A stretch of 64,000 bases of DNA from Caecitellus pseudoparvulus (taxonomy: Eukaryota > Protista > Bigyra: Bicosoecida), in the NCBI GenBank assembly GCA_965644315.1, contig CBFFRQ010000054.1, positions 186,001-250,000 on the forward strand, given 5' to 3'. Shown here piece by piece: positions 37,775 through 61,140 of the stretch (its first letter is position 1; every line of letters starts with the position of its first letter). The notes under the pieces were generated by a model that saw nothing but the letters and a program-made list of their open reading frames with translations, was not told the origin of the DNA and searched no databases. The position numbers were made by a program, and so were the translations under genes.

Positions 37775-38701
37775 ATGGCTGATAGCAGTGGAGTGTCGGT
37801 GGTGGCACGGTGGAAGGCTGCATGCGACGTTGAGCAAGCAGATGTGCTACTGAGCATGCTGCACGGGTGTGGTGATGGTGCAGATGCGGAGCTGGGAGGC
37901 TTGTCACGTTCGGACACAACTGCTGCCTTTGTGGTCGCTTGCAAGGCAGGGCATGTTGGGCTGCTGCGTGGGCTGTTGACGTTGGAGGGGGATCTTGCAG
38001 TGGACGTACATGCAGGACTTGATGGCTACCCTGAGAGTGGCTTCAGAGCTGCTTGTCAGAATGGGAACTTGGACGTGGTGCGCGAGCTGCTTGCGTTAAC
38101 AGGAGACCGTGAAGTTGATGTACATGCTGGGCGAGAGGGCGAGCCTGAGGCTGGCTTCCGGCTTGCGTGTCAGCATGGGCACCTGAATGTGGTGCGTGAG
38201 CTTCTGGACCTGGCCGGGCATCGCGAAGTAGATGTGCATGCTGCGTTCATGGGCAATCCAGAGGCTGGGTTCTGGCTTGCATGCTACACTGGGCATGTGG
38301 AGGTGGTACGAGAGTTGCTGGCTCTTTCTGGGTCTCGTGAAGTGGATGTACATGCGGGGTTTAAGGGTGATCCCGAGGCCGGCTTCCGATGGGCCTGTAA
38401 CAATGGGCACGTTGATGTGGTTCGCGAGCTGCTTGCTCTGGGCGGGCATCGTGAGATAGATGTGCACGTAGAAGACTGGCGTGGACCTGAGGCTAGCTTT
38501 CGCCTTGCTTGCAAGGAGGGACACACTGATGTAGCTCGTGAGCTGCTGGGCCTGACTGGCCACCGAGCCATCATTCTGCAAGCACGCCTTGCCGCAGGAG
38601 AGGCAGCTGTGCAGGCGGGCAAGGATGCAGTGTGGGTTGGCACCAGTACGCGGCAGGGTCGCCAGGCATTGGTGCTGCTGCGGGCAGCTCGAGCAGCGTA
38701 G
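37775..38701 (+). CDS. Ankyrin-array gene A1 (308 aa; N-cap + 4 x 38-aa repeats + C-cap)
   Basis: Repeats read xxxxxPExGFxxACxxGHxxVVRELLxLxGxREVDVHA. The gene is intronless and ends RAARAA. Confidence 0.88.
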   Translation: MADSSGVSVVARWKAACDVEQADVLLSMLHGCGDGADAELGGLSRSDTTAAFVVACKAGHVGLLRGLLTLEGDLAVDVHAGLDGYPESGFRAACQNGNLDVVRELLALTGDREVDVHAGREGEPEAGFRLACQHGHLNVVRELLDLAGHREVDVHAAFMGNPEAGFWLACYTGHVEVVRELLALSGSREVDVHAGFKGDPEAGFRWACNNGHVDVVRELLALGGHREIDVHVEDWRGPEASFRLACKEGHTDVARELLGLTGHRAIILQARLAAGEAAVQAGKDAVWVGTSTRQGRQALVLLRAARAA

Positions 38702-39528: not shown

Positions 39529-40002
39529 TCACTTGCATGGGCCGTTTGCTTGATATTGAGGCAAGTTTGGGACGTGTTTTGGTGGGCAACTTTGTCCTCG
39601 ACTGTTGCGTTGTCCCACAGGACCATCCAGGCGCTCCCCATGAGTGAAACCAAACCGAAAGTCCATGAATTCACGGGATCTTGTGTCTTGGTAGTTAAGG
39701 CATCTTCTTATCGTCTCTCTCTCGAGAAAACCACTAATCAGCACCGACCGTTGCGGAATGCGGAACTTGATCAGCCGCCCCAGACGTTCCGGCGCCGAGT
39801 ACACGCTCAGGAGCTCAGTTGCGGCAACAAGAGTCAGGTTCTTACGTCTTAAAGTAGAGATGATGCTTTGTAGCCTGATTAATTGTGCTGAATTGTCTTG
39901 CAGACTGAGATAGATGGATGTGGAAGCTGTTGTCCTCTTAGTGACTAACTCCTCTTCCAGTGATTCCAAACTCTTACCCTTCATCCACCTCCAGACACTC
40001 AA
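39529..40002 (-). CDS. Hypothetical small ORF inside transposon 1
   Basis: 157-codon ORF in the AT-richer end of the element, with no recognised motif. Confidence 0.2.
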   Translation of the reverse strand: MSVWRWMKGKSLESLEEELVTKRTTASTSIYLSLQDNSAQLIRLQSIISTLRRKNLTLVAATELLSVYSAPERLGRLIKFRIPQRSVLISGFLERETIRRCLNYQDTRSREFMDFRFGFTHGERLDGPVGQRNSRGQSCPPKHVPNLPQYQANGPCK

Positions 40003-40344
40003 TTTTCACTATCTTTTGATCAAAACTGGATATTAATGGAAAAATATAACAGGGGCTAGAATGTTCAAAGGTATGGTAGGCTTCTTGCTTGCCTCATGTG
40101 CTCAGGAGACTCGGCAAACGGCCCGGCGTGGCGTTTCATCTGGCACTCTTCCCTGGCAGAGTTCCATGTGGACCCACAGAGGGTGCGGCAGAGTACGGGA
40201 TGGCTGTAATCCTATGATAAGCGTAATATAGTGGAATACATTTCGAGGCGTGAAAAAAGCTCCGAAATACCACGTTTTTTGTCGGTTTGGAGGCCGTCTT
40301 TGTTGGACTGGCTCTGGGGTGAAACTCCGGTGAAACTTGGCCGG

Positions 40345-43300: not shown

Positions 43301-44647
43301 GTCCAGGGGATGGGTCCTTCGACCAGCTTGTGGGTCTCCTCATCCGCTTGATCGAACCTGCTCCCCAGAGCTGGGTGTGCGGCAGCGACGCCAACTGCCT
43401 GAATCCGCCGCTCTGGGGGCTGCTTCTTGTGAGGAATGAAATGCTTGTAAACTGTGCCAGCAAACGCAGCATGCTCAGGTTTCTCGACATACCACTTGTC
43501 TTCGGTGATTGCGTGGGTGTATCCCCCGAGGAGACCCTGCTCGCCGACACACTCCTCCTCGCGGTCTGTGGTTCGATACACCAAGCCGCCTTCAATCCTG
43601 CGGACCTTGTCCCGAAGAGCGGCAGTCACAGGTCCCTGTGCGTCCCGCAACGCGGCCGCAATCCCAATCTCTGCCTTGTCTGCCATGTAGGTCAGCACAA
43701 GCCCCTCCCCAGGCTGTGGAGGAAGCGCCATCCTGCCCAAGGCTGCGCGCACCATCATCACGCTCGACCCAACAAGCTGAACAGTGGCAGGCTTGGCAGG
43801 CGATGCCATTAACACGGTCAGGATTGTGCTCATGTTCCCGGCGAGCGCCGCTGGACAGGTGGGCACGAGAACCTCCCTGGGAGGCTGTGGGAGGCAATGC
43901 TCAGCGGGCCCCACTGCAGAGCACTGCTCGGTGAGCTCGCCTGGACTCATGTCACCGTGAAGGAGAAGGTGGGAGGCTGCTGGGGCACACCTGTGAACAA
44001 CAGCTTCAGACTTGGCCAGCGCCTGGTCGGACCACGTGCTACCGTGCCCCAGAGGAACGCTGCGGCGCAGGCTGTGCAACGCTGATTTTGTCAGTGACTC
44101 TGGAGACAGGTCTTCGACCGAGTCTGAAGCAACTGTAACCTCCACGGGGCTCTGGGCATCAGGATGGCCTGCGGACAAAGGCGGATGTGGGGGACTGCAG
44201 GTACAGGCCGAGACCCTGCAGGAAACAAGAGAAAAGCTTCAGTATCACCTTCTTCATGCCGTTGTGGTGCTTCATGGGGCACCAGAGTGTCTGCATCTTG
44301 CTCTGTGGTACGGAAACGCTCGCAGCTGGTGCTGCCGTTATGGGCGAAACGCCGTTAGCACCACAAGACGCAAATACGCACCTTCTGCTGCCATTTTGAC
44401 AGGTCCTGCCCCAGCAGGAGTGAGATTCAAATCCTTTTTTCACCATTGCACGCCAAAAACACACGTCAGAGGAGCAGTGGTAGTGAGTGCCGTCAATGAA
44501 GGTTGAGTTGCTACTGCCCTTGCGGGGAGCATAGCACCCTCGTGCAATGGCCGCGGCCCGGAGCGAGCAAAGCTGACATTCAGAAGCCTTGGACCTTTCT
44601 ACCTTGAAACAGTGCGTTGTAAGCACCCCTGGGGCTCTTCGCGGCAT
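40345..44647 (-). pseudogene. Large DDE transposase of the IS256/DxxH group (MuDR/Kolobok/Dada-like), interrupted by one TAG
   Basis: ORFs 42601-44178 and 40345-42543 are in the same frame and separated only by TAG at 42603-42601. Motifs: ISVDWTF (D), VITVDN (D), AVDPWHFASRV (DxxH), GGNESLH (E), and an upstream Cys/His cluster CPN..C..CTQC..CQKH. Cys-rich ORF 44159-44647 is a possible first exon; its splice junction is not resolved. Confidence 0.75.
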
Positions 44648-45218
44648 CCTGGCGTGGGTAGCGCAATGTCGTTCCTCGGTCAGTGGGGGCGCCCGTTGGA
44701 GCTGGTGCCGGAGGAGGTGGGGGGTACATTCAAAACGATGTGACGGTCAAGGAGAGAGGGGCAAAGGCGCCAAGTGAAGGAGATCAAATCCAAGTTGATG
44801 AGTGTCCAAATGCCACCTTTGTCACCCGACAATTTACCTAGACTATAAACTTATTCTCGTAGGTCTCGTGAAACCCTGCAATAAGGGCAAATGTAGGACA
44901 AACTGATATAAGGTCTAGCACTATGCTCAACATTCTTAGAGCAATTTTGCGTTCTTGGAGGTTTTGCGCAACAAGACCCGGCGGGGGGGCTTCGCCAAAA
45001 TTCAAATACTTCAAATTTGAGTTTTTTGTTTGATGGTGCCGTTGGCCGTTGGCGTTACGGGCACCGAAAGAAAACGGCCAATCACCCAAGGCCGTCTACC
45101 TCTTTCAGAATAAGCGCTGGCTCAAAAATTTCACGCAATTCATGGCCAACCTCAAGCTTTCTCATAACTTCCGCCATTTGTTCGCCCGGTTTCCTCTTCC
45201 AAGCCGAATTCTCACCCA

Positions 45219-47429
45219 GTGGTGATGGCGACGAAACGAGACCGATCCGGCGCCCCGTTGCGAACGGCCACAGCTGTCCCGGAAAGGTCGTCACGCGGAA
45301 TAGCTCAAGGAATTCTTGAAGCAAGTGCCCACATGATGAACCTTGGTGCGGCCTCACTTGTCACAGGGCAGTCGTTGCTTGTACACTCGGTGCATGCCTT
45401 GGCAGGCCAGCTTCGAGCCGAAGGCTACACCCGCAGGGATCAGCGGGAAGCGAAGTTCGGAGCAGCAAAAGGCAGAGGTAGGCTTCGTAGGATCAAGCCA
45501 CTTGTCATTCGCCAGTCTATTGAAGCGACGCTGCAGAACCCGAGGCACTGTTGGAGGTTAACGGGGATGAACGCAGAGATGTACAGGCACTTCTCTGACG
45601 AAGTCCAGAGAGCTCTCGTAAAGGCCAAAAACATGCAAACCAAGCAGCACTCAGCCTTTGTACGGATTTTCATTTGCATTTCCCAGCTCCGTGGGCACCC
45701 TCCTGCCGCTCTGGCGATCATTACGAAGATGCCGGAAGGATCTATGCATGGGATCTTCCGGGAGGTGATTCCCTTCGTCCTCTCTGTTGCCACCAGAAAT
45801 TTGATGCTCAAGATACCCGAAGATCAGCGGGACGTGTCTCACGGGATTTTTGGCGGCGCACTTGGCCGTGTTGTCGGGGCAGTGGATGGGGTAACCATCC
45901 CGATGCAAGCGATGCCGGGCCGACCCCAATCCCACTACAACGTCCACCACAAGATTCCAGGTTACGACTTCCTGCTTGTGACAGACCTCACTGGAGTTCC
46001 CTTGGCTATTTTTGAGATGGGGCCTGGATCACAGTCTGAAGTTGCGGCGGCGTCAGACGCGGTGCGAACCCTGCGCCGCCATGGAGTCATGGAGCCAGGC
46101 GATCTGCTGCTAGGAGATGCATTGTACTGGCACTCCAACAAGCACATTGTAGCGGGAGACAAGCCATCCCACCTCAAACAGTGGGCCGACAAGATCACCC
46201 AGCACATTGAGGCTGGGTGGGAGGATGCCGAAGAGCTCGAGAGGCTGCGCATGGCGTCTGGGATGCTGCTTAGCTTGGATCTGCGAACGGAGATGATAAG
46301 CAGCGCAAGGCTTGTAGTGGAGAACTGCAACAACGTCATCAAGTCGTTCAATGGTAGGTTGAGCGAAAGACACTCACAGATGCCGTTCCTCGCAGACCAA
46401 AAGGCACTTCTGCTCTTGACGGTCAAGGCGGTCACAGGTCTTGTTGCATTTCGGATGCTTTACACTCGTCGCAGCCTCCGAAGCGAGTCATGGCTGCTTC
46501 GAAAGAATCACTCGTTGAGCTTGCTCCATCTCACTGTAAAGGCCGACCGTGCATTAGGGGAGGCAGCAGATCGCACATTTGAAGACCTGCCCCGACTGAT
46601 GCAAGTCCGGCGCAACAAGCGACCCATGAAGGTGGCTTATCAGGCCGTTGCCAAAGCTGTGCGTGATGCACAAGGGGAATCTGCGCCTGAGGTTGAAGCC
46701 CAGCCCCCTCGCGGGGCCTCGTCAGAGCTTTGGGAGCAGATCCAAACCATGACGACGCTGCTCCATGGACTTGATCGCGAGGTGCTGCAGGACCTGGACC
46801 AAGGGGGCTTGTCATCCTTGAAGAAGAGGAGCAAGAAGCCCGGCACAGCATCTGCTGTGCCGGGTCAACCCCGTCATACACGGAGTCGAGGCAGTGCACA
46901 ACAGGAAGTCATGCCACGACTGCGAAAGTGGTTTCACGGGATGGTCCTTCGGCAAAACGAACCTCTCATGTACTCGGGGGGGTCACAACCCGAGCGAGGC
47001 TACGCAGTGTTGGTCCACCCCTACACCGCAATGTGGGAGGTGTACTACTACCACGAGGATGGAACCGAGGAACAAGAGCTGCACTCCTCGGGAGCAGCGA
47101 CGCACTTGTACAACACACTCCCTCTGATCGCAGAGAGGTTGGCATTGGACAAGAACTGCACTCCAGTGGAGCTTAGCCTGTTGCAGTGTCCGGGATCTGG
47201 TTTGGAGGACAGCCCGCTCGTGGAGTTTGCGTCTGGACTTCTCCTTGAGGGTGACCCTTGTCTGGACCCGGACTCGATAGCGCGGATGACCATCGACCAG
47301 CTTCGCCAACGATGTGAAGAAACGGGGTTGTCTTGCATTGGTACGAGGGGCGACCTCGTTCACCGGCTGACACTTTCCTGCGCTTCGCAAGGCACAGCCA
47401 CGGCAGCGGGATCTGCCCTACCGAAGTGA
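45219..47429 (+). CDS. Harbinger-type (DDE_Tnp_4-like) transposase with a C-terminal SAP-like domain
   Basis: Motifs: VVGAVDGVTIP (D), HYNVHHKIPG..LVTDLTG, LLLGDALY (D), ARLVVENCNNVIK (E). The C-terminal MTIDQLRQRCEETGLSCIGTRGDLVHRL fits the SAP consensus. Confidence 0.87.
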   Translation: MVMATKRDRSGAPLRTATAVPERSSRGIAQGILEASAHMMNLGAASLVTGQSLLVHSVHALAGQLRAEGYTRRDQREAKFGAAKGRGRLRRIKPLVIRQSIEATLQNPRHCWRLTGMNAEMYRHFSDEVQRALVKAKNMQTKQHSAFVRIFICISQLRGHPPAALAIITKMPEGSMHGIFREVIPFVLSVATRNLMLKIPEDQRDVSHGIFGGALGRVVGAVDGVTIPMQAMPGRPQSHYNVHHKIPGYDFLLVTDLTGVPLAIFEMGPGSQSEVAAASDAVRTLRRHGVMEPGDLLLGDALYWHSNKHIVAGDKPSHLKQWADKITQHIEAGWEDAEELERLRMASGMLLSLDLRTEMISSARLVVENCNNVIKSFNGRLSERHSQMPFLADQKALLLLTVKAVTGLVAFRMLYTRRSLRSESWLLRKNHSLSLLHLTVKADRALGEAADRTFEDLPRLMQVRRNKRPMKVAYQAVAKAVRDAQGESAPEVEAQPPRGASSELWEQIQTMTTLLHGLDREVLQDLDQGGLSSLKKRSKKPGTASAVPGQPRHTRSRGSAQQEVMPRLRKWFHGMVLRQNEPLMYSGGSQPERGYAVLVHPYTAMWEVYYYHEDGTEEQELHSSGAATHLYNTLPLIAERLALDKNCTPVELSLLQCPGSGLEDSPLVEFASGLLLEGDPCLDPDSIARMTIDQLRQRCEETGLSCIGTRGDLVHRLTLSCASQGTATAAGSALPK

Positions 47430-47598
47430 GCTCGAGGACACCACCCCTCTCAATGGTGTCTTCCCCCTGGCCCACCCGGCAGCGTGCATTGATCAGCAAA
47501 GCCGTGTCTCGCTCCTGTTCCCTCCTCTGATCACCATACACAACAAATACAATGACTTTACACTCGGGACGGAAGGAGTGAAAGGTGTGTCCCCTGGA

Positions 47599-48936
47599 TC
47601 ATGCAAGACGAGCCTCTATCCGTGTCACTGCTTGCTCGATCGACGTCATCCTGTCCAAGAGCTGGACAAGAGCCTCCTTCAGAGTGTCGTGCATGCGTTG
47701 AGAGTCCCTTGACACATCGAAGCACTCTTTTGCTTGTTGGGCAGCCTTTCGAAGCACTGCAGCGCTGTGAAACAGACCGCTTGGGTCACTGCCGCGGTTT
47801 CCAGCATTGCGTCTTGATGCTGAAGCCTCAGTTGCTTGTGCTACTGCTGCGATTGCAGCGTCTTGCTCCTCAAGAGACAGAGCGGTCTCGACAGACAAGA
47901 AGGGGACTGCCGCGGGGTCGATCTGACATGCCGCCTCAGTAAGTTCATCAACCAGCGTATCAGCAATGTTGCTAGGGGTACCCGCCTGTCCCGGGCTTGG
48001 GGTCTGAGCTCCTCGAACCGATTTGGACCGTGGTCGATCGAGGGCCGGGGACGTACGCTGACGCTTCCGTCGGCTTCGCTCAAGCTTTGGGTTCACGCGA
48101 ACAGCCATGCGCACCACTGAATGGTAACGAATGTACCCGAAAGCTGCTGCGAAGCGTGCAACTTCTTCACTTCCCGGAGTCAGGGTGGGGCCAAGGCACG
48201 GACCTGAGTGAGCCTCCTGGTTGTGAACATGTACCCGCAGCAAGGCTGAAAATGGGAGCAATGCTGGATCAGAAGGGCATTTAGTTGGATCCTCTGGGAA
48301 TGCCACGGCTGGATTTTCCACTGCATGCTCTGCAAGAAGCTCAAGGGCCTGGATGGCTTCCTTGAGTCCCCGTCGCAGTCTGCCCTTCAATTGCAGGTTG
48401 TGGAAAGTCCTCTGTACAGACTTCCCGTTCTTGCGGTCTGCCAAGAAAGCTGACAACTTTGCTTGGGCATGTGCAGCAGACCAGTACAGCCCTGCAGGGC
48501 CCACGTTTCCCTCTGTTGGAACGCCAAGGTATGCAGCTGCATGCTCAGGCCGCACCAGCCATGAAACGCCACCGGGGACGTCCACGGTTCCGGCTCCCGC
48601 GCTGATCAATCGCTCCAAGAACTTGATAAACTGGGTCTTTTCTGCAGCTTTATGCGGAAGAGCATCGACAAGGGACCCACCTTCGTCCATTTTCTTCTCC
48701 AGCCAGCTTGAGGCAATCTAGGCGTTTCATTTGAAACGGGTTTGTGGGGTACCACACCTACAGCAGCAAGATCCAGCGCCAAAACTCACTGCGAAAAGGG
48801 TCAGTACAACGTCATCTGGGACTGGGACTCCTCTGGGTTTTACGATTCCGCGTTGTACGGCATCCTGTTGGCCATTCGGGGTTGTTGAGTGGGGTTGGGA
48901 ACCATGCTGGCTCCCGCCAGCCGGATGGGCGGCCAT
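47599..48936 (-). CDS. Harbinger accessory protein (ORF2); putative DNA-binding protein with a basic NLS and a C-terminal coiled coil
   Basis: Exon 48936-48790 joins ORF 47599-48690 in frame through a 72-nt intron (48789-48718, GTGAGT..CTAG). It contains RSRRKRQR and ends LVQLLDRMTSIEQAVTRIEARL. The gene lies between the TIRs, convergent with the transposase. Confidence 0.7.
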
Positions 48937-49486
48937 CTGGAAAGAATCCAAGCCAAAACTAAAGTCCGTAGTACTGGGATAAGTTGTGCAGCTTTTAGTA
49001 TGCTCTGAGTTGGATTTGAGTGAAGTATCATTTTATTCCTGCAAACCGATTTCCGCAATTCTCACTTGCCAATCACTACGACCTACAGCAAAACCTGCAT
49101 CAGGCTGGCGAGTGCAAGCGATTGATTCCGCATGAAGTACATATCGATCAGTTTTTGGTGGGGTTCCCAACTCAAATATCCCAAGAATCCTCATTTCGCC
49201 ATTTCTGATATAAGCCTGAACTCCTACAGTAGTCAATCAGCAATTTCTTACTGTAAGGTTTCACGAGACCTATCTCGACGCACCGCTGTGCTGGAGTCCG
49301 CTTGCACCCAGTCTAATGGGCCAGGCAGCAATGCAAGTCAGGCAGCTGCGATATTGTCGGGGCTGCGTCAAAATCAACGCCACTTCCTGCATGGGACACT
49401 GGAAAGCGGCTGTTTCAGAAACACTGTGCTGTGCAGGCGAGTTGGGTGGCAACGGTGACATGCGCGGAAACTGTATTCACCACGCC

Positions 49487-50599
49487 ATGGCTGATGGCAG
49501 TGACAGCCAGACGGTGGTGGATCGATGGCGCGCTGCATGTGATGGAGAGCAGGCAGATATGCTGATGAGCATGCTTGAGTGCTTTGGTGGTGGTGCGGAT
49601 GCGGGGCTGGATTAATTGTCAAGCGATGAGACAACGGCTGGCTTTGTGGTTGCTTGTGTGACAGGGCACGTTGGGCTGCTGCGTGAGCTGTTGGCGTTGG
49701 AGGGGGACCTTGCAGTGGACGTACATGCAGGACTCGATGGCTACCCTGAGATTGGTTTCCGTGAGGCCTGTGCGAATGGGCATGTGCAAACCGTGCGCGA
49801 GCTGCTGGCTTTGACTGGGCATCGTGAAGTTGATGTGCATGCTGGGCCTGAGGGCAATCCTGAGTACGGATTCCGAGTTGCCTGTGAGAACGGGCATGCG
49901 GATGTGGTGCGTGAGCTGTTGGCCTTGACTGACCATCGTGAAGTGGATGTGCATGGAGAAGATTGGCTTGCCGCTGAGGCAGGCTTCAGACAGGCCTGTG
50001 CCAACGGACACATTGACGTGGTGCGGGAGCTGCTGGCGCTGACGGGGCATCGTGAGGTGGACGTACATGCTGGACCTGAGGGAAGGCCTGAGGCTGGCTT
50101 CCGAAAAGCCTGTGAGAACGGCCACGTGGCCGTCACACTTGAGCTGCTGGCGCTGACCGGGCATCGTGAGGTGGACGTGCACGCAGAAGATTGGCTTGGA
50201 CCTGAGGCTGGCTTCCGACTTGCCTGTCAGAATGGCCACGTGGATGTGGTACGGGAATTGCTGGGCCTGAGCGGACATCGAGCCGTGGACGTACACGCGG
50301 GACGCCAAAATCGGCCCGGCTATGGCTTCCAGTATGCCCTTCTTGGTGGTCATAAGCATGTACTGCGCGAGCTTCTAGGCCTCACTGGTCATCGAGCCAT
50401 CCCACTGCAGGAACGTCTTGAGGCTGGAGAGGTAGGCGTGCAGCCGGCCAAGGATGCCGTCTGGCTCGGCACCAGCACTCGGCAGGGTCGGAAAGCCGTG
50501 TTGTTGCTACGGAGCGCAAGAAGGGCAAGGAAGCGTCCACGGCCACAGACCGGCTCAGCGTTGGTGTCTCCATCAGGGAAGGCTCCACGCTCTGACTGA
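49487..50599 (+). pseudogene. Ankyrin-array gene A2 (5 internal repeats) with a premature TAA
   Basis: ATG at 49487 in the shared context. In-frame TAA at 49613-49615, where paralogs have a Gly codon. The rest of the frame is intact but has no further Met. Confidence 0.82.
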
Positions 50600-50803
50600 G
50601 GGTGGCGGAGCTGGTGTTGGCCTCAATGCAGGTCAGGTAGGTGCGGCATTGTGATGGCTGTGTCAAAATCAAGACCCATGTCTTCTCCCTGATTGTACAT
50701 CGGAAATCGGCTACTCTTTTGATTGTGTGTTGTGCCGCCTGTGCTGCTGTGCAGGTGAGTTGGTTGGCGAAAGCACTTGCGCCATCTGCAATCCCGCCAC
50801 GCC

Positions 50804-53800
50804 ATGGCTGACGAGGGCGGCAGTGAGTCAGTGGAGGGGCGATGGAAGGCTGCATGTGATGGTGATCAGGCAGATGAGCTGATGAGCATCCTGGACGGGT
50901 GTGGAGATGGTGTGGGTGTGGAGTTGGGAGGTTTGTCGAGTGCTGACACCTCGGCTGGCTTTGTGGTTGCTTGCAAGACGGGGCACGTTGGGTTGTTGCG
51001 TGGGCTGCTGGCGCTGACCGGCCACCGCGAGGTGGATGTGCATGCTGGGCCTGAGGGTAATCCTGAGCATGGCTTCCGGCTTGCTTGTAAGCATGGGCAC
51101 ATCGACGTGGTGCGGGAGCTGCTGTCTTTGACCGGGCATCGCGAGGTGGACGTGCATGCTGGGCCTGAGGGCAATCCTGAGCATGGCTTCCGGCTTGCCT
51201 GTGAGTTCGGGCACATTGACGTGGTGCGGGAGCTGCTGGCTCTGAACGGGCACCGCGAGGTGGATGTGCATGCTGGGCCTGAGGGTGATCCTGAGGCTGG
51301 CTTCCGATTTGCTTGTCAGAATGGGCACATTGACGTGGTGCGTGAGCTGCTGTCTTTGACCGGGCATCGCGAGGTGGATGTGCATGCTGGGCCTGAGGGT
51401 AATCCTGAGCATGGCTTCCGGCTTGCCTGTGAGTTCGGGCACATTGACGTGGTGCGGGAGCTGCTGGCTCTGAACGGGCACCGCGAGGTGGATGTGCATG
51501 CTGGGCCTGAGGACAATCCTGAGCGAGGCTTCCTGCTTGCTTGTCAGAGTGGGCATATTGACGTGGTGCGAGAGCTGCTGGCGCTGACCGGGCATCGTGA
51601 GGTGGACGTGCATGCTGGGGTTGAGGGCTGGCCAGAGGCTGGCTTCCTGCTTGCTTGTAAGCATGGGCACATCGATGTGCTGCGTGAGCTGCTGGCTCTG
51701 ACCGGGCACCGCGAGGTGGATGTGCATGCTGGGCCTGAGGGCAATCCTGAGCATGGCTTCCGGCTTGCCTGTGAGTTCGGGCACATTGACGTGGTGCGGG
51801 AGCTGCTGGCTCTGAACGGGCACCGCGAGGTGGATGTGCATGCTGGGCCTGAGGGTGATCCTGAGGCTGGCTTCCGATTTGCTTGTCAGAATGGGCACAT
51901 TGACGTGGTGCGTGAGCTGCTGTCTTTGACCGGGCATCGCGAGGTGGATGTGCATGCTGGGCCTGAGGGTAATCCTGAGCATGGCTTCCGGCTTGCCTGT
52001 GAGTTCGGGCACATTGACGTGGTGCGGGAGCTGCTGGCTCTGAACGGGCACCGCGAGGTGGATGTGCATGCTGGGCCTGAGGGTGATCCTGAGGCTGGCT
52101 TCCGATTTGCTTGTCAGAATGGGCACATTGACGTGGTGCGTGAGCTGCTGTCTTTGACCGGGCATCGCGAGGTGGATGTGCATGCTGGGCCTGAGGGTAA
52201 TCCTGAGCATGGCTTCCGGCTTGCCTGTGAGTTCGGGCACATTGACGTGGTGCGGGAGCTGCTGGCGCTGACCGGGCTTCGTGAGGTGGATGTGCATGCT
52301 GGGCCTGAGGACAATCCTGAGCGAGGCTTCCTGCTTGCTTGTCAGAATGGGCACATTGACGTGGTGCGTGAGCTGCTGTCTTTGACCGGGCATCGCGAGG
52401 TGGACGTGCATGCTGGGCCTGAGGGTAATCCTGAGCATGGCTTCCGGCTTGCCTGTGAGTTCGGGCACATTGACGTGGTGCGGGAGCTGCTGGCGCTGAC
52501 CGGGCATCGTGAGGTGGACGTGCATGCTGGGGTTGAGGGCTGGCCAGAGGCTGGCTTCCTGCTTGCTTGTAAGCATGGGCACATCGATGTGCTGCGTGAG
52601 CTGCTGGCTCTGAACGGGCACCGCGAGGTGGATGTGCATGCTGGGCCTGAGGGCAATCCTGAGCATGGCTTCCGGCTTGCCTGTGAGTTCGGGCACATTG
52701 ACGTGGTGCGGGAGCTGCTGGCTCTGAACGGGCACCGCGAGGTGGATGTGCATGCTGGGCCTGAGGGTGATCCTGAGGCTGGCTTCCGATTTGCTTGTCA
52801 GAATGGGCACATTGACGTGGTGCGTGAGCTGCTGTCTTTGACCGGGCATCGCGAGGTGGATGTGCATGCTGGGCCTGAGGGTAATCCTGAGCATGGCTTC
52901 CGGCTTGCCTGTGAGTTCGGGCACATTGACGTGGTGCGGGAGCTGCTGGCGCTGACCGGGCTTCGTGAGGTGGATGTGCATGCTGGGCCTGAGGACAATC
53001 CTGAGCGAGGCTTCCTGCTTGCTTGTCAGGGAGGGCACATTGACGTGGTGCGGGAGCTGCTGGCGCTGACCGGGCATCGTGAGGTGGACGTGCATGCTGG
53101 GGCTGAGGGCTGGCCAGAGGCTGGCTTCCGGCTTGCTTGTAAGCATGGGCACATCGATGTGCTGCGTGAGCTGCTGGCTCTGAACGGGCACCGCGAGGTG
53201 GATGTGCATGCTGGGCCTGAGGGTGATCCTGAGGCTGGCTTCCGATTTGCTTGTCAGAATGGGCACATTGACGTGGTGCGTGAGCTGCTGTCTTTGACCG
53301 GGCATCGCGAGGTGGATGTGCATGCTGGGCCTGAGGGTAATCCTGAGCATGGCTTCCGGCTTGCCTGTGAGTTCGGGCACATTGACGTGGTGCGGGAGCT
53401 GCTGGCGCTGACCGGGCATCGCGAGGTGGACGTGCATGCTGCTCTCAGGGGTTACCCTGAGCAAAGCTTTCTGCTTGCTTGTAAGCATGGGCATATTGAC
53501 GTGGTACGCGAGCTGCTGGCTCTGACCGGGCACCGCGAGGTGGATGTGCATGCTGGGGTTGAGGGCTGGCCAGAGGCTGGCTTCCTGCTTGCTTGTAAGC
53601 ATGGGCACATCGACGTGCTGCGTGAGCTGCTGGCTCTGAACGGGCACCGCGAGGTGGATGTGCATGCTGGGCCTGAGGGTGATCCTGAGCATGGCTTCCG
53701 GCTTGCCTGTGAGTTCGGGCACATTGACGTGGTGCGGGAGCTGCTGGCGCTGACCGGGCTTCGTGAGGTGGATGTGCATGCTGGGCCTGAGGACAATCCT

Positions 53801-56362
53801 GAGCGAGGCTTCCTGCTTGCTTGTCAGGGAGGGCACATTGACGTGGTGCGGGAGCTGCTGGCGCTGACCGGGCATCGTGAGGTGGACGTGCATGCTGGGG
53901 CTGAGGGCTGGCCAGAGGCTGGCTTCCGGCTTGCTTGTAAGCGTGGGCACATTGACGTGGTGCGAGAGCTGCTGGCGCTGACCGGGCATCGTGAGGTGGA
54001 CGTGCATGCTGGGGTTGAGGGCCGGCCTGAGGCTGGCTTCCGACTTGCCTGTCAGGGAGGGCACATTGACGTGGTGCGGGAGCTGCTGGCGCTGACCGGG
54101 CTTCGTGAGGTGGATGTGCATGCTGGGCCTGAGGACAATCCTGAGCGAGGCTTCCTGCTTGCTTGTCAGGGAGGGCACATTGACGTGGTGCGGGAGCTGC
54201 TGGCGCTGACCGGGCATCGTGAGGTGGACGTGCATGCTGGGGCTGAGGGCTGGCCAGAGGCTGGCTTCCGGCTTGCTTGTAAGCATGGGCACATTGACGT
54301 GGTGCGAGAGCTGCTGGCGCTGACCGGGCATCGTGAGGTGGATGTGCATGCTGGGCCTGAGGGCCGGCCCGAGTGGGGCTTCCGAGCTGCCTGTCACAAT
54401 GGGCACATTGATGTGGTGCGAGAGCTGCTGGCGCTGACCGGGCATCGTGAGGTGGACGTGCATGCTGGGGTTGAGGGCCGGCCTGAGGCTGGCTTCCGAC
54501 TTGCCTGTGAGAATGGGCACATTGATGTGGTGCGAGAGCTGCTGGCGCTGAGAGGGCATCGCGAGGTGGATGTGCATGCTGGGCCTGAGGGGGATCCTGA
54601 GCATGGCTTCCGGCTTGCCTGTGAGTTCGGGCACATTGACGTGGTGCGTGAGCTGCTGTCTTTGACCGGGCATCGTGAGGTGGATGTGCATGCTGGGCCT
54701 GAGGGTTACCCTGAGCAAGGCTTCCTGCTTGCTTGTATGCATGGGCACATTGACGTGGTGCGGGAGCTGCTGGCGCTGACCGGGCATCGTGAGGTGGACG
54801 TGCATGCTTCGGACAATTTGGGGCCTGAGCATGGCTTCCGGCTTGCCTGTGAGTTCGGGCACATTGACGTGGTGCGGGAGCTGCTGGCGCTGACCGGGCA
54901 TCGCGAGGTGGATGTGCATGCAGGGGTCGGGGACAATCCTGAGTGTGCTTTCCAAAAGGCCTGCCATGAAGGCCATCTTGATGTGGTGCGAGAGCTGTTG
55001 GCGCTGACTGGTGCTCGAGAGGTGGATGTGCATGCTGGGCCTGAGGGCAATCCTGAGCAAGGCTTCCTGCTTGCTTGTATGCATGGGCACATCGACGTGC
55101 TGCAGGAGCTGCTGGCGCTGACCGGGCATCGTGAGGTGGACGTGCATGCTTCGGACAATTTGGGGCCTGAGCATGGCTTCCGGCTTGCCTGTGAGTTCGG
55201 GCACATTGACGTGGTGCGTGAGCTGCTGTCTTTGACCGGGCATCGTGAGGTGGATGTGCATGCTGGGCCTGAGGGTTACCCTGAGCAAGGCTTCCTGCTT
55301 GCTTGTAAGCATGGGCACATCGACGTGCTGCAGGAGCTGCTGGCGCTGACCGGGCATCGTGAGGTGGACGTGCATGCTTCGGACAATTTGGGGCCTGAGC
55401 ATGGCTTCCGGCTTGCCTGTGAGTTCGGGCACATTGACGTGGTGCGGGAGCTGCTGGCGCTGACCGGGCATCGCGAGGTGGATGTGCATGCAGGGGTCGG
55501 GGACAATCCTGAGTGTGCTTTCCAAAAGGCCTGCCATGAAGGCCATCTTGATGTGGTGCGAGAGCTGTTGGCGCTGACTGGTGCTCGAGAGGTGGATGTG
55601 CATGCTGGGCCTGAGGGCAATCCTGAGCAAGGCTTCCTGCTTGCTTGTATGCATGGGCACATTGACGTGGTGCGGGAGCTGCTGGCGCTGACTGGTGCTC
55701 GAGAGGTGGACGTGCATGCTGCTTTCAGGGGTGACCCTGAGCAAGGCTTCCTGCTTGCTTGTAAGCATGGGCACATTGACGTGGTGCGGGAGCTGCTGGC
55801 GCTGACGGGGCATCGTGAGGTGGACGTGCATGCTGGGGTTGGGGGCAGGCCTGAGCAAGGCTTCCTGCTTGCTTGTCAGGGAGGGCACATCGACGTGGTG
55901 CGGGAGCTGCTGGCGCTGACGGGTGATCGAGCCGTGGATGTGCATGCAGGGGTCGGAGGCAATCCTGAGTATGGCTTCCGAGCTGCCTGCGAGAATGGCC
56001 ACGTGGATGTGGTCCGCGAACTTCTGGCCCTAAGCGGACATCGCGAGGTGGACGTGCATGCTTGTATCCAGGGTGAGCCTGAGGCTGGCTTTCGACTTGC
56101 TTGCAAGAACAGGCATTTGAATGTTGTTCGCGACCTGCTGGGCCTCACAGGCCATCGAGCCATCCCACTGCAATCACGCCTTGAGGCTGGAGAGCTAGCT
56201 ATGCAGGCAGCCAGAGATGCCGTCTGGCTCGGTACCAGCACTCGGCAAGGCCGGAAAGCCGTGCTGCTGCTACGGAGCGCAAAGAGGGCAAGGAAGCGTC
56301 CACGTCCACAGACCGGCTCAGCGTTGGTGTCTCCATCAGGGAAGGCTCCACGCTCGGACTGA
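50804..56362 (+). CDS. Ankyrin-array gene A3 (1852 aa; 81-aa N-cap + 44 x 38-aa repeats + 99-aa C-cap with a basic NLS-like motif)
   Basis: 1852-81-99 = 1672 = 44 x 38. The tandem DNA unit is 114 bp and the tail contains KRARKRPRP. Confidence 0.92.
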   Translation: MADEGGSESVEGRWKAACDGDQADELMSILDGCGDGVGVELGGLSSADTSAGFVVACKTGHVGLLRGLLALTGHREVDVHAGPEGNPEHGFRLACKHGHIDVVRELLSLTGHREVDVHAGPEGNPEHGFRLACEFGHIDVVRELLALNGHREVDVHAGPEGDPEAGFRFACQNGHIDVVRELLSLTGHREVDVHAGPEGNPEHGFRLACEFGHIDVVRELLALNGHREVDVHAGPEDNPERGFLLACQSGHIDVVRELLALTGHREVDVHAGVEGWPEAGFLLACKHGHIDVLRELLALTGHREVDVHAGPEGNPEHGFRLACEFGHIDVVRELLALNGHREVDVHAGPEGDPEAGFRFACQNGHIDVVRELLSLTGHREVDVHAGPEGNPEHGFRLACEFGHIDVVRELLALNGHREVDVHAGPEGDPEAGFRFACQNGHIDVVRELLSLTGHREVDVHAGPEGNPEHGFRLACEFGHIDVVRELLALTGLREVDVHAGPEDNPERGFLLACQNGHIDVVRELLSLTGHREVDVHAGPEGNPEHGFRLACEFGHIDVVRELLALTGHREVDVHAGVEGWPEAGFLLACKHGHIDVLRELLALNGHREVDVHAGPEGNPEHGFRLACEFGHIDVVRELLALNGHREVDVHAGPEGDPEAGFRFACQNGHIDVVRELLSLTGHREVDVHAGPEGNPEHGFRLACEFGHIDVVRELLALTGLREVDVHAGPEDNPERGFLLACQGGHIDVVRELLALTGHREVDVHAGAEGWPEAGFRLACKHGHIDVLRELLALNGHREVDVHAGPEGDPEAGFRFACQNGHIDVVRELLSLTGHREVDVHAGPEGNPEHGFRLACEFGHIDVVRELLALTGHREVDVHAALRGYPEQSFLLACKHGHIDVVRELLALTGHREVDVHAGVEGWPEAGFLLACKHGHIDVLRELLALNGHREVDVHAGPEGDPEHGFRLACEFGHIDVVRELLALTGLREVDVHAGPEDNPERGFLLACQGGHIDVVRELLALTGHREVDVHAGAEGWPEAGFRLACKRGHIDVVRELLALTGHREVDVHAGVEGRPEAGFRLACQGGHIDVVRELLALTGLREVDVHAGPEDNPERGFLLACQGGHIDVVRELLALTGHREVDVHAGAEGWPEAGFRLACKHGHIDVVRELLALTGHREVDVHAGPEGRPEWGFRAACHNGHIDVVRELLALTGHREVDVHAGVEGRPEAGFRLACENGHIDVVRELLALRGHREVDVHAGPEGDPEHGFRLACEFGHIDVVRELLSLTGHREVDVHAGPEGYPEQGFLLACMHGHIDVVRELLALTGHREVDVHASDNLGPEHGFRLACEFGHIDVVRELLALTGHREVDVHAGVGDNPECAFQKACHEGHLDVVRELLALTGAREVDVHAGPEGNPEQGFLLACMHGHIDVLQELLALTGHREVDVHASDNLGPEHGFRLACEFGHIDVVRELLSLTGHREVDVHAGPEGYPEQGFLLACKHGHIDVLQELLALTGHREVDVHASDNLGPEHGFRLACEFGHIDVVRELLALTGHREVDVHAGVGDNPECAFQKACHEGHLDVVRELLALTGAREVDVHAGPEGNPEQGFLLACMHGHIDVVRELLALTGAREVDVHAAFRGDPEQGFLLACKHGHIDVVRELLALTGHREVDVHAGVGGRPEQGFLLACQGGHIDVVRELLALTGDRAVDVHAGVGGNPEYGFRAACENGHVDVVRELLALSGHREVDVHACIQGEPEAGFRLACKNRHLNVVRDLLGLTGHRAIPLQSRLEAGELAMQAARDAVWLGTSTRQGRKAVLLLRSAKRARKRPRPQTGSALVSPSGKAPRSD

Positions 56363-57606: not shown

Positions 57607-58533
57607 ATGGCTGATGGCAGTGACAGCCAGACGGTGGTGGATCGATGGCGCGCTGCATGTGGTTGAGAGCAGGCAGATGTGCTGATGAGCATGCTGCAGG
57701 GGTGTGGTGGTGGTGCGCCGGACTTGGATGGATTGTCAAGCACTGAGACAACGGCTGGCTTTGTGGTTGCGTGCAAGAATGGGCAAGTTGGGCTGCTGCG
57801 TGGGCTGCTGGCGTTGGAGGGGGATCTTGCAGTGGACGTACATGCAGAAGACTGGGGTGGGCCGGAGGCTGGCTTCCGATCTGCCTGTGGAAATGGGCAT
57901 GTCGAAATCGTGCGCGAGCTGCTTGCTCTGACCGGGCATCGTGAAGTCGATGTGCATGTTGGAGTTGAGGGCATTCCTGAGGCTGGCTTCCGGCTTGCGT
58001 GTCGCAACGGGAACCTGAATGTGGTGCGTGAGCTGCTGGAACTGGCTGGCTTTCGCGAAGTAGATGTGCATGCTGCGTTCATGGGCTCTCCTGAGGCTGG
58101 GTTCTGGCTCGCATGCTACAATGGGCATGTAGATGTGGTTCGTGAACTGCTGGCTCTTTCTGGGTCTCGTGATGTGGATGTACATGCGGGTTTTAAGGGT
58201 GACCCCGAGGCTGGCTTCCGACTTGCCTGTAACAATGGGCACATTGGAGTGGTGCGGGAGCTGCTTGCGCTGACTGGGCATCGCGAGGTAGATGTACACG
58301 CGTGCGTATTGGGTGTTCCCGAGGCAGGCTTCCGATGGGCATGTCAGGGAGGGTATGTGAATGTGGCTCGAGAGTTGCTGGGCCTCACTGGCCATCGGGC
58401 CACTCCCCATGAAGCACGCCTTGAGGCTGGAGAGGTGGCTGTGCAGCCAGCCAAGGATGCCGTCTGGCTCGGCACCAGCACTCGGCAGGGTCGCAGTGCC
58501 ATGCTGCTGCTGCGAGCTGCCCGAGCTGCATAG
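57607..58533 (+). pseudogene. Ankyrin-array gene A4 (4 internal repeats) with a premature TGA at codon 20
   Basis: ATG at 57607 and TGA at 57664-57666, where A2 has GGA. An in-frame ATG at 57685 could allow re-initiation. The frame ends RAARAA like A1. Confidence 0.75.
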
Positions 58534-59229: not shown

Positions 59230-61140
59230 ATGGCTGAAGGTAGCAGTGGGGAGTCGTTGGTGGGTCAATGGAAGGCAGCATGTGATGGTGAGCAGGTAGA
59301 CGTGCTGCTGAGCATGCTTGAGAGGTGCGGTGGTCGTGCGGGGCCGGAGCTGGGAGGCTTGTCAGGCGATGAGACAACGGCCGGCTTCTTGGTTGCGTGC
59401 AAGAAAGGGCACGTTGGGCTGCTGCGTGGGTTGTTGGCGTTGGAGGGGGACCTTGCTGTGGACGTGCATGCACAAGATGAAGATGGGCCGGAGGCTGGCT
59501 TCCTGGTTGCCTGCTTGCATGGGCAAAGTGACGTGGTGCGGGAGCTGCTGGCGCTGACCGGGCATCGTGAGGTGGATGCTCATGCGGGGCCTGAAGGGGA
59601 TCCTGAGTGGGGCTTTCAGGCTGCATGCCAGGAAGGGCATATTGACGTGGTGCGAGAGCTGCTGGCGCTAAATGGGCAACGAGAGGTGGACGTGCATGCT
59701 GGGCCTGAGGGCCGGCCAGAGGCTGGCTTCCGGCTTGCTTGTCAGGAAGGGCATATTGACGTGGTGCGTGAGCTGCTGGCGTTGAGGGGGCATCGCGAGG
59801 TGGATGTGCATGCTGGGCCTGAGGGGGATCCTGAGCATGGCTTCCGGCTTGCCTGTGAGTTCGGGCACATTGACGTGGTGCGGGAGCTGCTGGCTCTGAG
59901 CGGGCATCGTGAGGTGAATGTGCATGCTGGGGATGAGTATGGGCCTGAGGCTGGCTTCCTGCTTGCTTGTCAGGATGGGCACATTGGCGTTGTGCGAGAG
60001 CTGCTGGCTCTGACGGGTGATCGAGCTGTAGACGTGCATGCTGGGCCTGAAGGGGATCCTGAGTGGGGTTTACTGGTTGCGTGTGAGAATGGGCACATTG
60101 ACGTTGTGCGCGAGCTGCTGGCGCTGACAGGTCACCGAGCTGTGGATGTGCATGCAGGGGTCGGAGGCAATCCTGAGCACGGCTTCCTGCTTGCCTGCCA
60201 GAACGGGCACATTGATGTGGTGTGTGAGCTGCTGGCGCTGACGGGTGATCGAGCCGTGGATGTGCATGCAGCCTTCAATGGCGACCCTGAGTGGGGCTTC
60301 CTGCTTGCCTGCGAGAACGGCCACATTGATGTGGTGCGTGAGCTGCTGGCGCTGACGGGTGATCGCGAGGTGGACGTGCATGCTGGGCCTGAGGGCGAGC
60401 CTGAGGCTGGCTTTCGATTTGCTTGTCAGAGTGGGCACATTGACGTGGTGCGGGAGCTGCTGGCGCTGACCGGGCATCGTGAAGTGAATGTTCATGCAGG
60501 AGATTGGCTTGGGCCTGAGGCTGGCTTTCGACAAGCTTGTCAGCATGGGCACATTGACGTTGTGCGCGAGCCGCTGGCGCTGACTGGTGCTCGAGAGGTC
60601 GATGTGCATGCTGCATTCCTTGGCAGGCCCGAGGCTAGCTTCCAAGTTGCATGCCAGGAAGGGCATATTGATGTGGTGCGAGAGCTGCTGGCTTTGAGCG
60701 GGCACCGTGAGGTGGATGTGCATGCTATGGCTGAGGGTGATCCTGAGGCTGGCTTCCGACTTGCTTGTCAGAATGGGCACATTGACGTGGTGCGGGAGCT
60801 GCTGGCGCTGACTGGACATCGTGAGGTGGATGTGCATGCCGAGGCTGATGGTGAGCTTGAGGCTGGCTTTCGACTTGCTTGCAAAAACAGGCATTTGAAT
60901 GTTGTTCGCGACCTGCTGGGCCTCACAGGCCATCGAGCCATCCCACTGCAATCACGCCTTGAGGCTGGAGACCTAGCTATGCAGGCAGCTAGAGATGCCG
61001 TCTGGCTCGGTACCAGCACTCGGCAAGGCCGGAAAGCCATGCTGCTGCTACGGAGCGCAAGAAGGGCAAGGAAGCGTCCACGGCCACAGACCGGCTCAGC
61101 GTTGGTGTCTCCATCAGGGAAGGCTCCACGCTCTGACTGA
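59230..61140 (+). CDS. Ankyrin-array gene A5 (636 aa; 12 internal repeats; NLS-like tail)
   Basis: 636-81-99 = 456 = 12 x 38. The C-cap is almost identical to that of A3. Confidence 0.92.
   Translation: MAEGSSGESLVGQWKAACDGEQVDVLLSMLERCGGRAGPELGGLSGDETTAGFLVACKKGHVGLLRGLLALEGDLAVDVHAQDEDGPEAGFLVACLHGQSDVVRELLALTGHREVDAHAGPEGDPEWGFQAACQEGHIDVVRELLALNGQREVDVHAGPEGRPEAGFRLACQEGHIDVVRELLALRGHREVDVHAGPEGDPEHGFRLACEFGHIDVVRELLALSGHREVNVHAGDEYGPEAGFLLACQDGHIGVVRELLALTGDRAVDVHAGPEGDPEWGLLVACENGHIDVVRELLALTGHRAVDVHAGVGGNPEHGFLLACQNGHIDVVCELLALTGDRAVDVHAAFNGDPEWGFLLACENGHIDVVRELLALTGDREVDVHAGPEGEPEAGFRFACQSGHIDVVRELLALTGHREVNVHAGDWLGPEAGFRQACQHGHIDVVREPLALTGAREVDVHAAFLGRPEASFQVACQEGHIDVVRELLALSGHREVDVHAMAEGDPEAGFRLACQNGHIDVVRELLALTGHREVDVHAEADGELEAGFRLACKNRHLNVVRDLLGLTGHRAIPLQSRLEAGDLAMQAARDAVWLGTSTRQGRKAMLLLRSARRARKRPRPQTGSALVSPSGKAPRSD

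What the first reader, a model, noticed from the sequence alone, without database searches (positions are those of the whole stretch)
51047..56062. A3 repeats are combinatorial chimeras arranged in higher-order blocks
Seen: a limited set of cassettes recurs, including A=GPEGNPEH/RLACEF, B=GPEGDPEA/RFACQN, C=GPEDNPER/LLACQx, D=GVEGWPEA/LLACKH, SDNLGPEH/RLACEF and GVGDNPEC/QKACHE. The 5' order reads roughly A B A C D A B A B A C A D A B A C D' B A. A three-unit block recurs 570 bp apart (~54.8 and ~55.4 kb). Hybrids such as GPEGDPEH/RLACEF, GAEGWPEA/RLACKH and GPEGNPEQ/LLACMH join halves of different cassettes at the conserved CCTGAG and GGCTTC islands. Cassette types change from 5' to 3'. Inference: ongoing unequal crossover or gene conversion creates new specificities. 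A code-like, TALE/PPR-style reading of a polymeric ligand is a speculative alternative.
Basis: partly seen in the sequence, partly recalled or inferred. Interest (0 to 1): 0.8.

Follow-up and report, generated by a model that had tools for sequence, protein, structure and literature searches.

The report
Shuffled ankyrin-repeat array in a protist
A single-celled flagellate has a gene with 45 ankyrin repeats that it copies in blocks and recombines, so the protein-binding groove varies while the scaffold stays fixed; fungal immune receptors are already known to do this, but this gene lacks their signalling ATPase.

Summary
Observation confirmed. Window 51047-56062 holds 44 exact 114-bp units in one intact ORF (50804-56362, 1852 aa). 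They encode 38-residue ankyrin repeats (Pfam Ank_2 525 bits; AlphaFold pLDDT 86; Foldseek hits are ankyrin proteins). Cassette order, the 570-bp block and the 5'-to-3' gradient are real (p<0.001). Recombination is strongly supported (PHI p<0.001, at least 8 events, trees of the two unit halves reject each other), but inferred switches are not confined to the two named islands. Variation sits on the loop and the exposed side of helix 1, the usual ankyrin binding face (dN/dS about 1-2 versus 0.1 in the scaffold); positive selection is suggested, not proven. The TALE/PPR reading is unsupported: wrong fold, ten variable positions, strongly acidic array. The gene is one of five tandem paralogues (two with early stops) in a probable stramenopile flagellate. 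Block duplication is normal in long ankyrin arrays, and this diversification is known from fungal NLR sensors. New here: the 38-residue unit without TPLH, no NACHT/NB-ARC, an undescribed C-terminal motif, and relatives fused to a helical plus pseudokinase-like domain. Most likely a fast-diversifying intracellular protein binder, perhaps for defence.

The parts
50804..56362 (+). A3 gene: single uninterrupted ORF, 1852 aa, about 200 kDa; no signal peptide seen by eye
   Evidence: Pfam Ank_2 E=4e-161
50804..51046 (+). N-terminal cap, 81 aa, acidic, ending in a degenerate ankyrin repeat; no effector or NTPase domain
   Evidence: 72-74% nt identity to the caps of all four paralogues
51047..56062 (+). 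Array of 44 ankyrin units of 38 aa (114 bp). Variable: unit positions 1-5 (loop) and 8, 11, 12, 15, 16 (one side of helix 1). Scaffold nearly fixed.
51152..52970 (+). 5' zone of A/B/C/D cassettes with overlapping exact block duplications of 296-375 bp at offsets of 2, 5, 6, 7, 8 and 13 units
54763..55092 (+). First copy of the 330-bp exact block (about three units)
55333..55662 (+). Second copy of the 330-bp exact block, 570 bp downstream
56063..56362 (+). Capping unit 45 and basic tail with two predicted helices; 94% nt identical to the same part of paralogue A5
56225..56275 (+). Family-wide C-terminal motif W-x(n)-R-x-G-R-(R/K)-x-h-h-L-x-R; no Pfam or PDB match
56282..56308 (+). Basic stretch KRARKRPRP resembling a nuclear localisation signal (resemblance from general knowledge, untested); also in A2 and A5, absent from A1 and A4
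37775..38701 (+). Paralogue A1, 308 aa, 5 units, intact
49487..50599 (+). Paralogue A2, 6 units, in-frame stop at codon 43 (49613) and two transposons in its upstream region; probable pseudogene
57607..58533 (+). Paralogue A4, 5 units, in-frame stop at codon 20 (57664); 76% nt identical to A1 over 1.7 kb
59230..61140 (+). Paralogue A5, 636 aa, 13 units, intact; shares a 95-bp exact tract with A3 units 31-32, and its 3' flank is 97% identical to that of A3

Best explanation
A3 encodes a long intracellular ankyrin solenoid with high internal conservation. SHOWN: the units are ankyrin repeats. The array grew by in-register duplication of blocks of two or more units and was reshuffled by recombination between misaligned units, with exchange also between A3 and paralogue A5. 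The scaffold is under strong purifying selection, while the loop and the exposed face of helix 1 change amino acids freely. INFERRED: the mechanism is ordinary homology-driven unequal crossover and gene conversion, since the long conserved scaffold lets any unit pair with any other. Because neighbouring repeats jointly form an ankyrin groove, each reshuffle makes a new composite protein-binding surface. INFERRED, weaker: the family is a diversifying recognition repertoire in a biotic conflict (viruses, intracellular bacteria or mobile elements), like the repeat sensors of fungal NLRs. As it has no ATPase, it would act as a stand-alone binder, decoy or adaptor, passing the signal or cargo through the conserved C-terminal motif or through the pseudokinase-fused relatives. 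Confidence: about 0.95 for ankyrin plus recombination, 0.8 for a protein ligand, 0.45 for a defence role.
For: Pfam and PDB sequence hits are ankyrins and DARPins. The model has pLDDT 86 and pTM 0.79, with helix 1 at unit positions 8-16 and helix 2 at 19-26; Foldseek returns FEM1B/C, EHMT1, NOMPC, ankyrins and DARPins. PHI p=2e-4, codon-level p=3e-4, and incompatibility rises from 0.26 to 0.67 with distance; 200 clonal simulations never show such a trend, and AU tests reject each half's tree for the other half. Hudson-Kaplan minimum is 8 events. pN/pS is 1.3 on the face and 0.12 on the scaffold; codon-model omega is 8.7 for exposed helix-1 sites, 0.88 for the loop, 0.083 for the scaffold. The same positions vary in 42 units from 13 outside proteins (Spearman 0.75). 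Unit positions 1, 2-5, 12 and 15 map onto or next to randomised positions 33, 2-3, 10 and 13 of a designed ankyrin library (PMC4308713). The cluster shows birth and death: 5-45 units, two early stops, inserted transposons. Fungal NLR ankyrin arrays show the same pattern (PMC4986451, PMC13449251).
Against: No ligand, expression or phenotype data. Positive selection is not established: sites were chosen partly by their variability, recombination inflates tree-based omega, and a tree-free count gives 1.66 for helix 1 and 1.13 for the whole face, neither different from 1. No second allele of A3 was found, so repeat-number polymorphism is untested. A3 has no effector domain and the pseudokinase-like domain is not in the window. 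One position randomised in designed libraries (position 5) corresponds to an invariant Glu here. Low GC3 (0.64 vs 0.86 for COPA) and pseudogenised neighbours also fit weakly constrained, little-expressed genes.
Confidence: 0.6

Rival explanations
1. Mostly neutral runaway expansion. A short (5-6 unit) ankyrin adaptor gene expanded by unequal crossover because similar units recombine easily. The scaffold is kept by folding constraints and homogenisation, surface residues drift, and the combinations are not selected.
For: Block duplication and higher similarity in longer arrays are general in ankyrins (PMC7314423, PMC1553488). The tree-free N/S ratio of the face is about 1. Most paralogues have 5-6 units and two carry early stops. 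Internal identity rises with array length: 0.68-0.70 for 4-5 units, 0.74 for 12, 0.81 for 44.
Against: The 5.5-kb ORF is intact with no indel. Codons 8 and 16 each show 7 codons for 7 different amino acids and no synonymous variant. Helix-1 face omega is 8.7, LRT p=8e-4. Distinct cassettes persist despite homogenisation of the scaffold.
Confidence: 0.25
2. A structural, spring-like or scaffolding solenoid (as in NOMPC or membrane ankyrins) in which length matters and cassette order matches a periodic cellular protein polymer.
For: 45 repeats is nearly two superhelical turns if 24 repeats make a turn (PMC7314423; that figure is for 33-aa units). NOMPC is the top PDB sequence hit. Identical neighbours are absent (0 observed vs 2.7 expected, p=0.05; helix-1 half p=0.006).
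Against: Unit number varies from 5 to 45 among paralogues and the order has no single period. The family is lineage-specific and turns over fast. No membrane anchor or channel is attached. Lack of identical neighbours also follows from multi-unit duplication.
Confidence: 0.07
3. TALE/PPR-like code: each cassette reads one base or monomer of a nucleic acid or other polymer.
For: A limited cassette alphabet in a long, highly conserved array; a basic NLS-like tail in A2, A3 and A5.
Against: Ankyrin fold, no TAL or PPR Pfam hit. About ten positions vary, not two. Net charge is about -136 at pH 7 and the face averages -1.5 per unit. The order is explained by block duplication history.
Confidence: 0.03
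4. Assembly artefact: a shorter array was over-expanded or scrambled by the assembler, producing blocks and chimeras.
For: Short-read assemblers shorten such arrays and invent chimeric repeats (PMC12222747). No reads or second assembly of this locus were available.
Against: 32 distinct units, the longest exact duplicate is only 375 bp, block copies end in divergent flanks, there is a smooth 5'-to-3' gradient with divergent terminal units, and no frameshift. The window runs through the whole cluster, whereas a 97%-identical metagenome contig ends at about 37.5 kb, at the cluster edge, which suggests a long-read source (inference).
Confidence: 0.05

Closest known systems
Fungal NLR sensor domains with high internal conservation (Podospora Pa_3_8560 and Pa_2_8180 ANK arrays; HET-D/E/R WD40 arrays; PMC4986451, PMC13449251, PMC12222747)
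   Same: Highly similar tandem units, concerted evolution, repeat shuffling within and between paralogues, variable residues on inner helix and loop of the ankyrin groove.
   Different: No NACHT or NB-ARC and no N-terminal effector; 38-aa units rather than 33-36; 45 repeats versus 7 to over 16 (21 in Chaetomium); unicellular probable stramenopile; polymorphism and function untested.
Long natural ankyrin arrays in general (PMC7314423; PMC1553488)
   Same: Longer arrays have more similar units, grow by copying 2-7 units at a time, mostly in the middle, and can show several periods in one array.
   Different: Non-canonical 38-aa unit in which TPLH is replaced by x-G-F-x with both x positions variable; clear sub-unit mosaicism and a tenfold face-versus-scaffold contrast.
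DARPins and the ANK-N5C designed library (PMC4308713; PDB 4QFV, 7Z71)
   Same: Capped ankyrin scaffold with fixed framework and varied loop and helix-1 positions; a natural analogue of a combinatorial binder library.
   Different: Natural, diversified by recombination of a few cassettes; 45 rather than 3-7 repeats; extra variable sites at the TPLH positions.
Brown-algal ROCO LRR genes with exon shuffling (PMC11378527)
   Same: Stramenopile candidate immune receptors whose repeat units are shuffled and diversified.
   Different: There each repeat is its own exon and the protein has a ROC-COR GTPase; here the array is one exon with no NTPase.
TALE and PPR proteins (own knowledge)
   Same: Long arrays of near-identical helical units with a limited alphabet.
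   Different: Different fold, no two-residue code, strongly acidic surface.

Membership tests
Ankyrin repeat proteins | Match to ankyrin HMMs above curated cut-off | tested here: met
   Ank_2 524.6 bits vs cut-off 27.3; Ank 263.5 vs 21.1
Ankyrin repeat proteins | Stacked helix-turn-helix units with projecting loop | tested here: met
   Model pLDDT 86, two helices per unit; all listed Foldseek hits are ankyrin-repeat proteins, best E 1.7e-7, TM about 0.55
Ankyrin repeat proteins (canonical consensus) | 33-residue unit with TPLH motif | tested here: not met
   38-residue unit, x-G-F-x in place of TPLH; a divergent variant
Repeats with high internal conservation (HIC) | Mean identity to consensus of 0.85 or more over at least 100 aa (PMC4986451) | tested here: met
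   0.87 over 1672 aa
HIC NLR receptors (fungal type) | Central NACHT or NB-ARC ATPase | tested here: not met
   No P-loop domain in A3 or its paralogues; only an 81-aa N-cap precedes the array
HIC NLR receptors (fungal type) | N-terminal effector domain | tested here: not met
   Absent from A3; relatives carry a helical plus kinase-fold domain that the window does not encode
HIC NLR receptors (fungal type) | Repeat shuffling within and between paralogues | tested here: met
   PHI, simulation and AU tests; 95-bp exact tract shared with A5
HIC NLR receptors (fungal type) | Positive selection on the binding face | tested here: inconclusive
   omega 8.7 (p=8e-4) on helix-1 face by codon model, but tree-free ratio 1.66 is not significant
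HIC NLR receptors (fungal type) | Repeat-number polymorphism among strains | not testable with these tools
   No other allele retrieved
HIC NLR receptors (fungal type) | Non-self recognition or cell-death function | not testable with these tools
   Needs experiments
TALE proteins | TAL repeat with two adjacent variable residues | tested here: not met
   No TAL Pfam hit; ten variable positions
PPR proteins | 35-aa PPR motif with a basic RNA-binding groove | tested here: not met
   No PPR Pfam hit; net acidic face
Brown-algal exon-shuffling ROCO/NB-ARC receptors | One repeat per exon, with an NTPase domain | tested here: not met
   Array is one continuous ORF without NTPase

The most novel reading that the evidence does not exclude
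An undescribed, ATPase-free immune repertoire of a unicellular flagellate: stand-alone 38-aa ankyrin binders diversified by cassette recombination (a natural DARPin library), working with helical-plus-pseudokinase ankyrin proteins as MLKL-like signalling or executioner partners through a conserved C-terminal docking motif that also occurs in proteins labelled viral metagenome.
Probability: 0.2. Interest if true: 0.75.

Novelty: new variant of a known kind. Interest (0 to 1): 0.4.

Why it matters
How unicellular protists recognise viruses and intracellular microbes is poorly known (own knowledge). If this array is polymorphic and selected, it extends the diversify-by-repeat-shuffling strategy of fungal NLRs to a protist family without an ATPase, and gives testable candidates. 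It also offers a natural 38-aa ankyrin scaffold with extra variable positions and a clean single-gene record of how repeat arrays evolve. The shuffling and block structure themselves are well precedented and would not surprise a specialist.

Tried and rejected
Looked for another allele of A3: exact look-up of A5, JGI metagenomes (only generic ankyrins at 23-38% identity), prokaryotic genomes and viral contigs gave no close relative. The word search was run on the 636-aa paralogue, so it saw only proteins of about 350-1110 aa; long relatives of A3 were not searched and no absence is claimed. The costly representative search was not used because the family was already identified. TALE/PPR reading rejected (fold, charge, number of variable sites). 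Breakpoints confined to two islands rejected. Tree-like repeat history rejected. NLR membership rejected (no ATPase). The C-terminal motif matched no Pfam family or solved structure, so an F-box or SOCS-box identity is unsupported. The relatives' N-terminal domain had no sequence-level match; only fold search suggested a kinase fold, and MLKL was not among the listed hits. A dynein tree left the host as a long unplaced branch. Literature searches for the sample accession and for a bicosoecid ankyrin expansion found nothing. My notebook gives the A2 stop as codon 37 and the A3 start as 50807; the correct values are codon 43 and 50804.

Full report
Context. The window is eukaryotic. It encodes an axonemal-type dynein heavy chain (1-13683, minus strand), coatomer alpha and a condensin subunit. 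Named top hits of the dynein are stramenopiles (oomycetes, Cafeteria, pelagophytes) at only about 57% identity, and a tree leaves it as a long unplaced branch. The host is therefore probably a divergent flagellated stramenopile; this is an inference. A metagenome contig (L003, ENA ERZ23499096) is 97% identical over window 19.2-36.1 kb and ends near 37.5 kb, where the ankyrin cluster begins. Nothing here looked human.

Observation. The stretch 51047-56062 consists of 44 units of exactly 114 bp inside one open frame, 50804-56362, 1852 aa. The cassettes, their order for units 2-21, the 570-bp block and the 5'-to-3' change of types are as reported. All exceed chance: repeated pairs 20 vs 3.3, triples 8 vs 0.19, mean distance between like cassettes 7.6 vs 15 units. 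Fourteen exact internal duplications of 226-375 bp occur at offsets of 2 to 17 units, never 1.

What the units are. They are ankyrin repeats: Pfam Ank_2 scores 525 bits and PDB sequence hits are NOMPC, FEM1, DARPins and consensus ankyrins. An AlphaFold model of units 39-45 plus tail has pLDDT 86 with helices at unit positions 8-16 and 19-26, and Foldseek returns ankyrin proteins. The unit is non-canonical: 38 aa, with TPLH replaced by x-G-F-x. Relatives have 38-aa or 34-aa versions. Identity to consensus is 0.87, which meets the published threshold for high internal conservation (PMC4986451).

Where it varies. Entropy concentrates at positions 1-5 (loop) and 8, 11, 12, 15, 16, a one-sided helical pattern on helix 1; positions 10, 13, 14, 17, 18 and most of helix 2 are invariant. 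Aligned on the AA-x-x-GH motif, positions 1, 2-5, 12 and 15 fall on or next to randomised positions 33, 2-3, 10 and 13 of a designed library whose randomised residues form the concave binding surface (PMC4308713). I had no model coordinates, so the face assignment rests on this alignment and on secondary structure. The same positions vary in 42 units of 13 outside proteins (Spearman 0.75). pN/pS is 1.3 on this face and 0.12 elsewhere. A codon model gives omega 8.7 for exposed helix-1 sites (p=8e-4), 0.88 for the loop and 0.083 for the scaffold, but a tree-free count gives 1.66 and 0.82, not different from 1. Purifying selection on the scaffold is shown; positive selection on the face is only suggested.

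Recombination. Incompatibility between sites rises from 0.26 within 3 bp to 0.67 beyond 40 bp; PHI p=2e-4, and 3e-4 when whole codons are permuted. None of 200 clonal simulations shows such a trend, and trees from codons 1-16 and 17-38 reject each other (AU p<1e-4). At least 8 events are needed. Painting each unit from the others needs 57 mismatches and 41 switches against 159 differences for whole-unit copying. Exchange extends to paralogue A5: a 95-bp exact tract is shared inside the arrays, and the last unit, tail and 3' flank are 94-97% identical while the N-caps are only 73% identical.

Surroundings. Five paralogues lie in tandem with 5, 6, 45, 5 and 13 units. A2 and A4 have early stops, and two abutting transposons with 26-bp terminal inverted repeats, one with a DDE_Tnp_4 transposase, sit upstream of A2. 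This is a birth-and-death cluster. The word search with A5 finds dozens of relatives, nearly all unnamed assembly proteins. Twenty-three share a C-terminal W...R-G-R-R-x-h-h-L-x-R motif with no database match. About a dozen distinct relatives carry the 38-aa unit behind a 520-aa domain that folds confidently (pLDDT 84) into a helical bundle plus a kinase-like fold. Nearly all Foldseek hits are kinases but weak (best E 7e-4), and no HRD or DFG motif is visible, so it is probably a pseudokinase. Three of these fused proteins come from the same dataset as L003 and have similar GC3, so they may belong to the same or a sister species; this is not proven. The domain is not encoded in the window.

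How it most likely works. Shown: block duplication and mosaic recombination of ankyrin units with a conserved scaffold and a free binding face. Inferred: misaligned pairing between the highly similar scaffolds drives unequal crossover and conversion, and each event builds a new composite groove for a protein ligand; the acidic surface (pI 5.4) points to a basic protein partner rather than nucleic acid. More weakly inferred: a defence or recognition role, by analogy with fungal NLR sensors and from the gene turnover and pseudokinase-fused relatives. The main rival is neutral expansion of a short adaptor gene. Structural-spring, polymer-code and assembly-artefact readings are each unlikely.

Comparison and verdict. 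Multi-unit duplication is the rule for repeat proteins and for ankyrins in particular (PMC1553488, PMC7314423). Shuffling with diversification of the ankyrin groove is described for fungal NLRs (PMC4986451, PMC13449251). A3 works like those sensor arrays but is not an NLR, since it lacks the ATPase and effector domains. It is a new variant of a known kind: real, well supported, moderately interesting (0.4). The upside is an ATPase-free protist immune repertoire (probability about 0.2, interest 0.75). Not checked: raw reads, alleles, expression, ligands, and long (over 1100 aa) relatives.

Noticed in passing
P0001 (L001:653-3883), P0016 (L072:10001-12700), P0002 (L078:2371-5091), alignment A2: Undescribed 520-aa domain (helical bundle plus kinase-like fold lacking HRD and DFG) fused to the same 38-aa ankyrin units, in one case also to SEL1 repeats (P0083). 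No Pfam or PDB sequence match. The layout recalls MLKL, but MLKL was not a listed hit.
   Followed up: partly
window 56225-56275 and C-termini of 23 homologues: Conserved C-terminal motif W...R-G-R-R-x-h-h-L-x-R shared by 34-aa and 38-aa family members, with a related form in P0033 and P0044 labelled viral metagenome; possible docking motif.
   Followed up: partly
window 39409-44860: DNA transposon-like element with 26-bp terminal inverted repeats (96% complementary) and ORFs at 40345-42543 and 42601-44178 (minus strand) without Pfam match.
   Followed up: partly
window 44860-49272: Second element with 26-bp terminal inverted repeats, directly abutting the first; DDE_Tnp_4 plus SAP ORF (45219-47429) and a convergent second ORF (47599-48690), a Harbinger-like layout.
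   Followed up: partly
window 29283-31853: 856-aa ORF without Pfam match, also present in the 97%-identical contig L003; could be a transposase remnant.
   Followed up: no
L073:8001-12576: A distant relative with the related repeat type (P0012) lies next to a cullin gene and two kinases on a gene-dense 175-kb contig; possibly viral, not verified; one observation only.
   Followed up: no
window 37000-62000: The cluster has lower GC (55-62% vs 65-71%), lower GC3 and lower CpG ratio (0.65-0.75 vs 0.79-0.89) than neighbouring housekeeping genes.
   Followed up: partly
window about 50637-50755 and matching positions upstream of A1, A2, A4, A5: Conserved upstream segment with splice-donor-like and acceptor-like motifs, suggesting a 5' intron; A3 starts only about 200 bp after the A2 stop codon.
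   Followed up: no
P0114 (CAE7938282.1): A family member is annotated as Symbiodinium sp. KB8 on a 1.3-kb contig; it may come from a contaminating flagellate in that assembly (suspicion from memory, untested).
   Followed up: no
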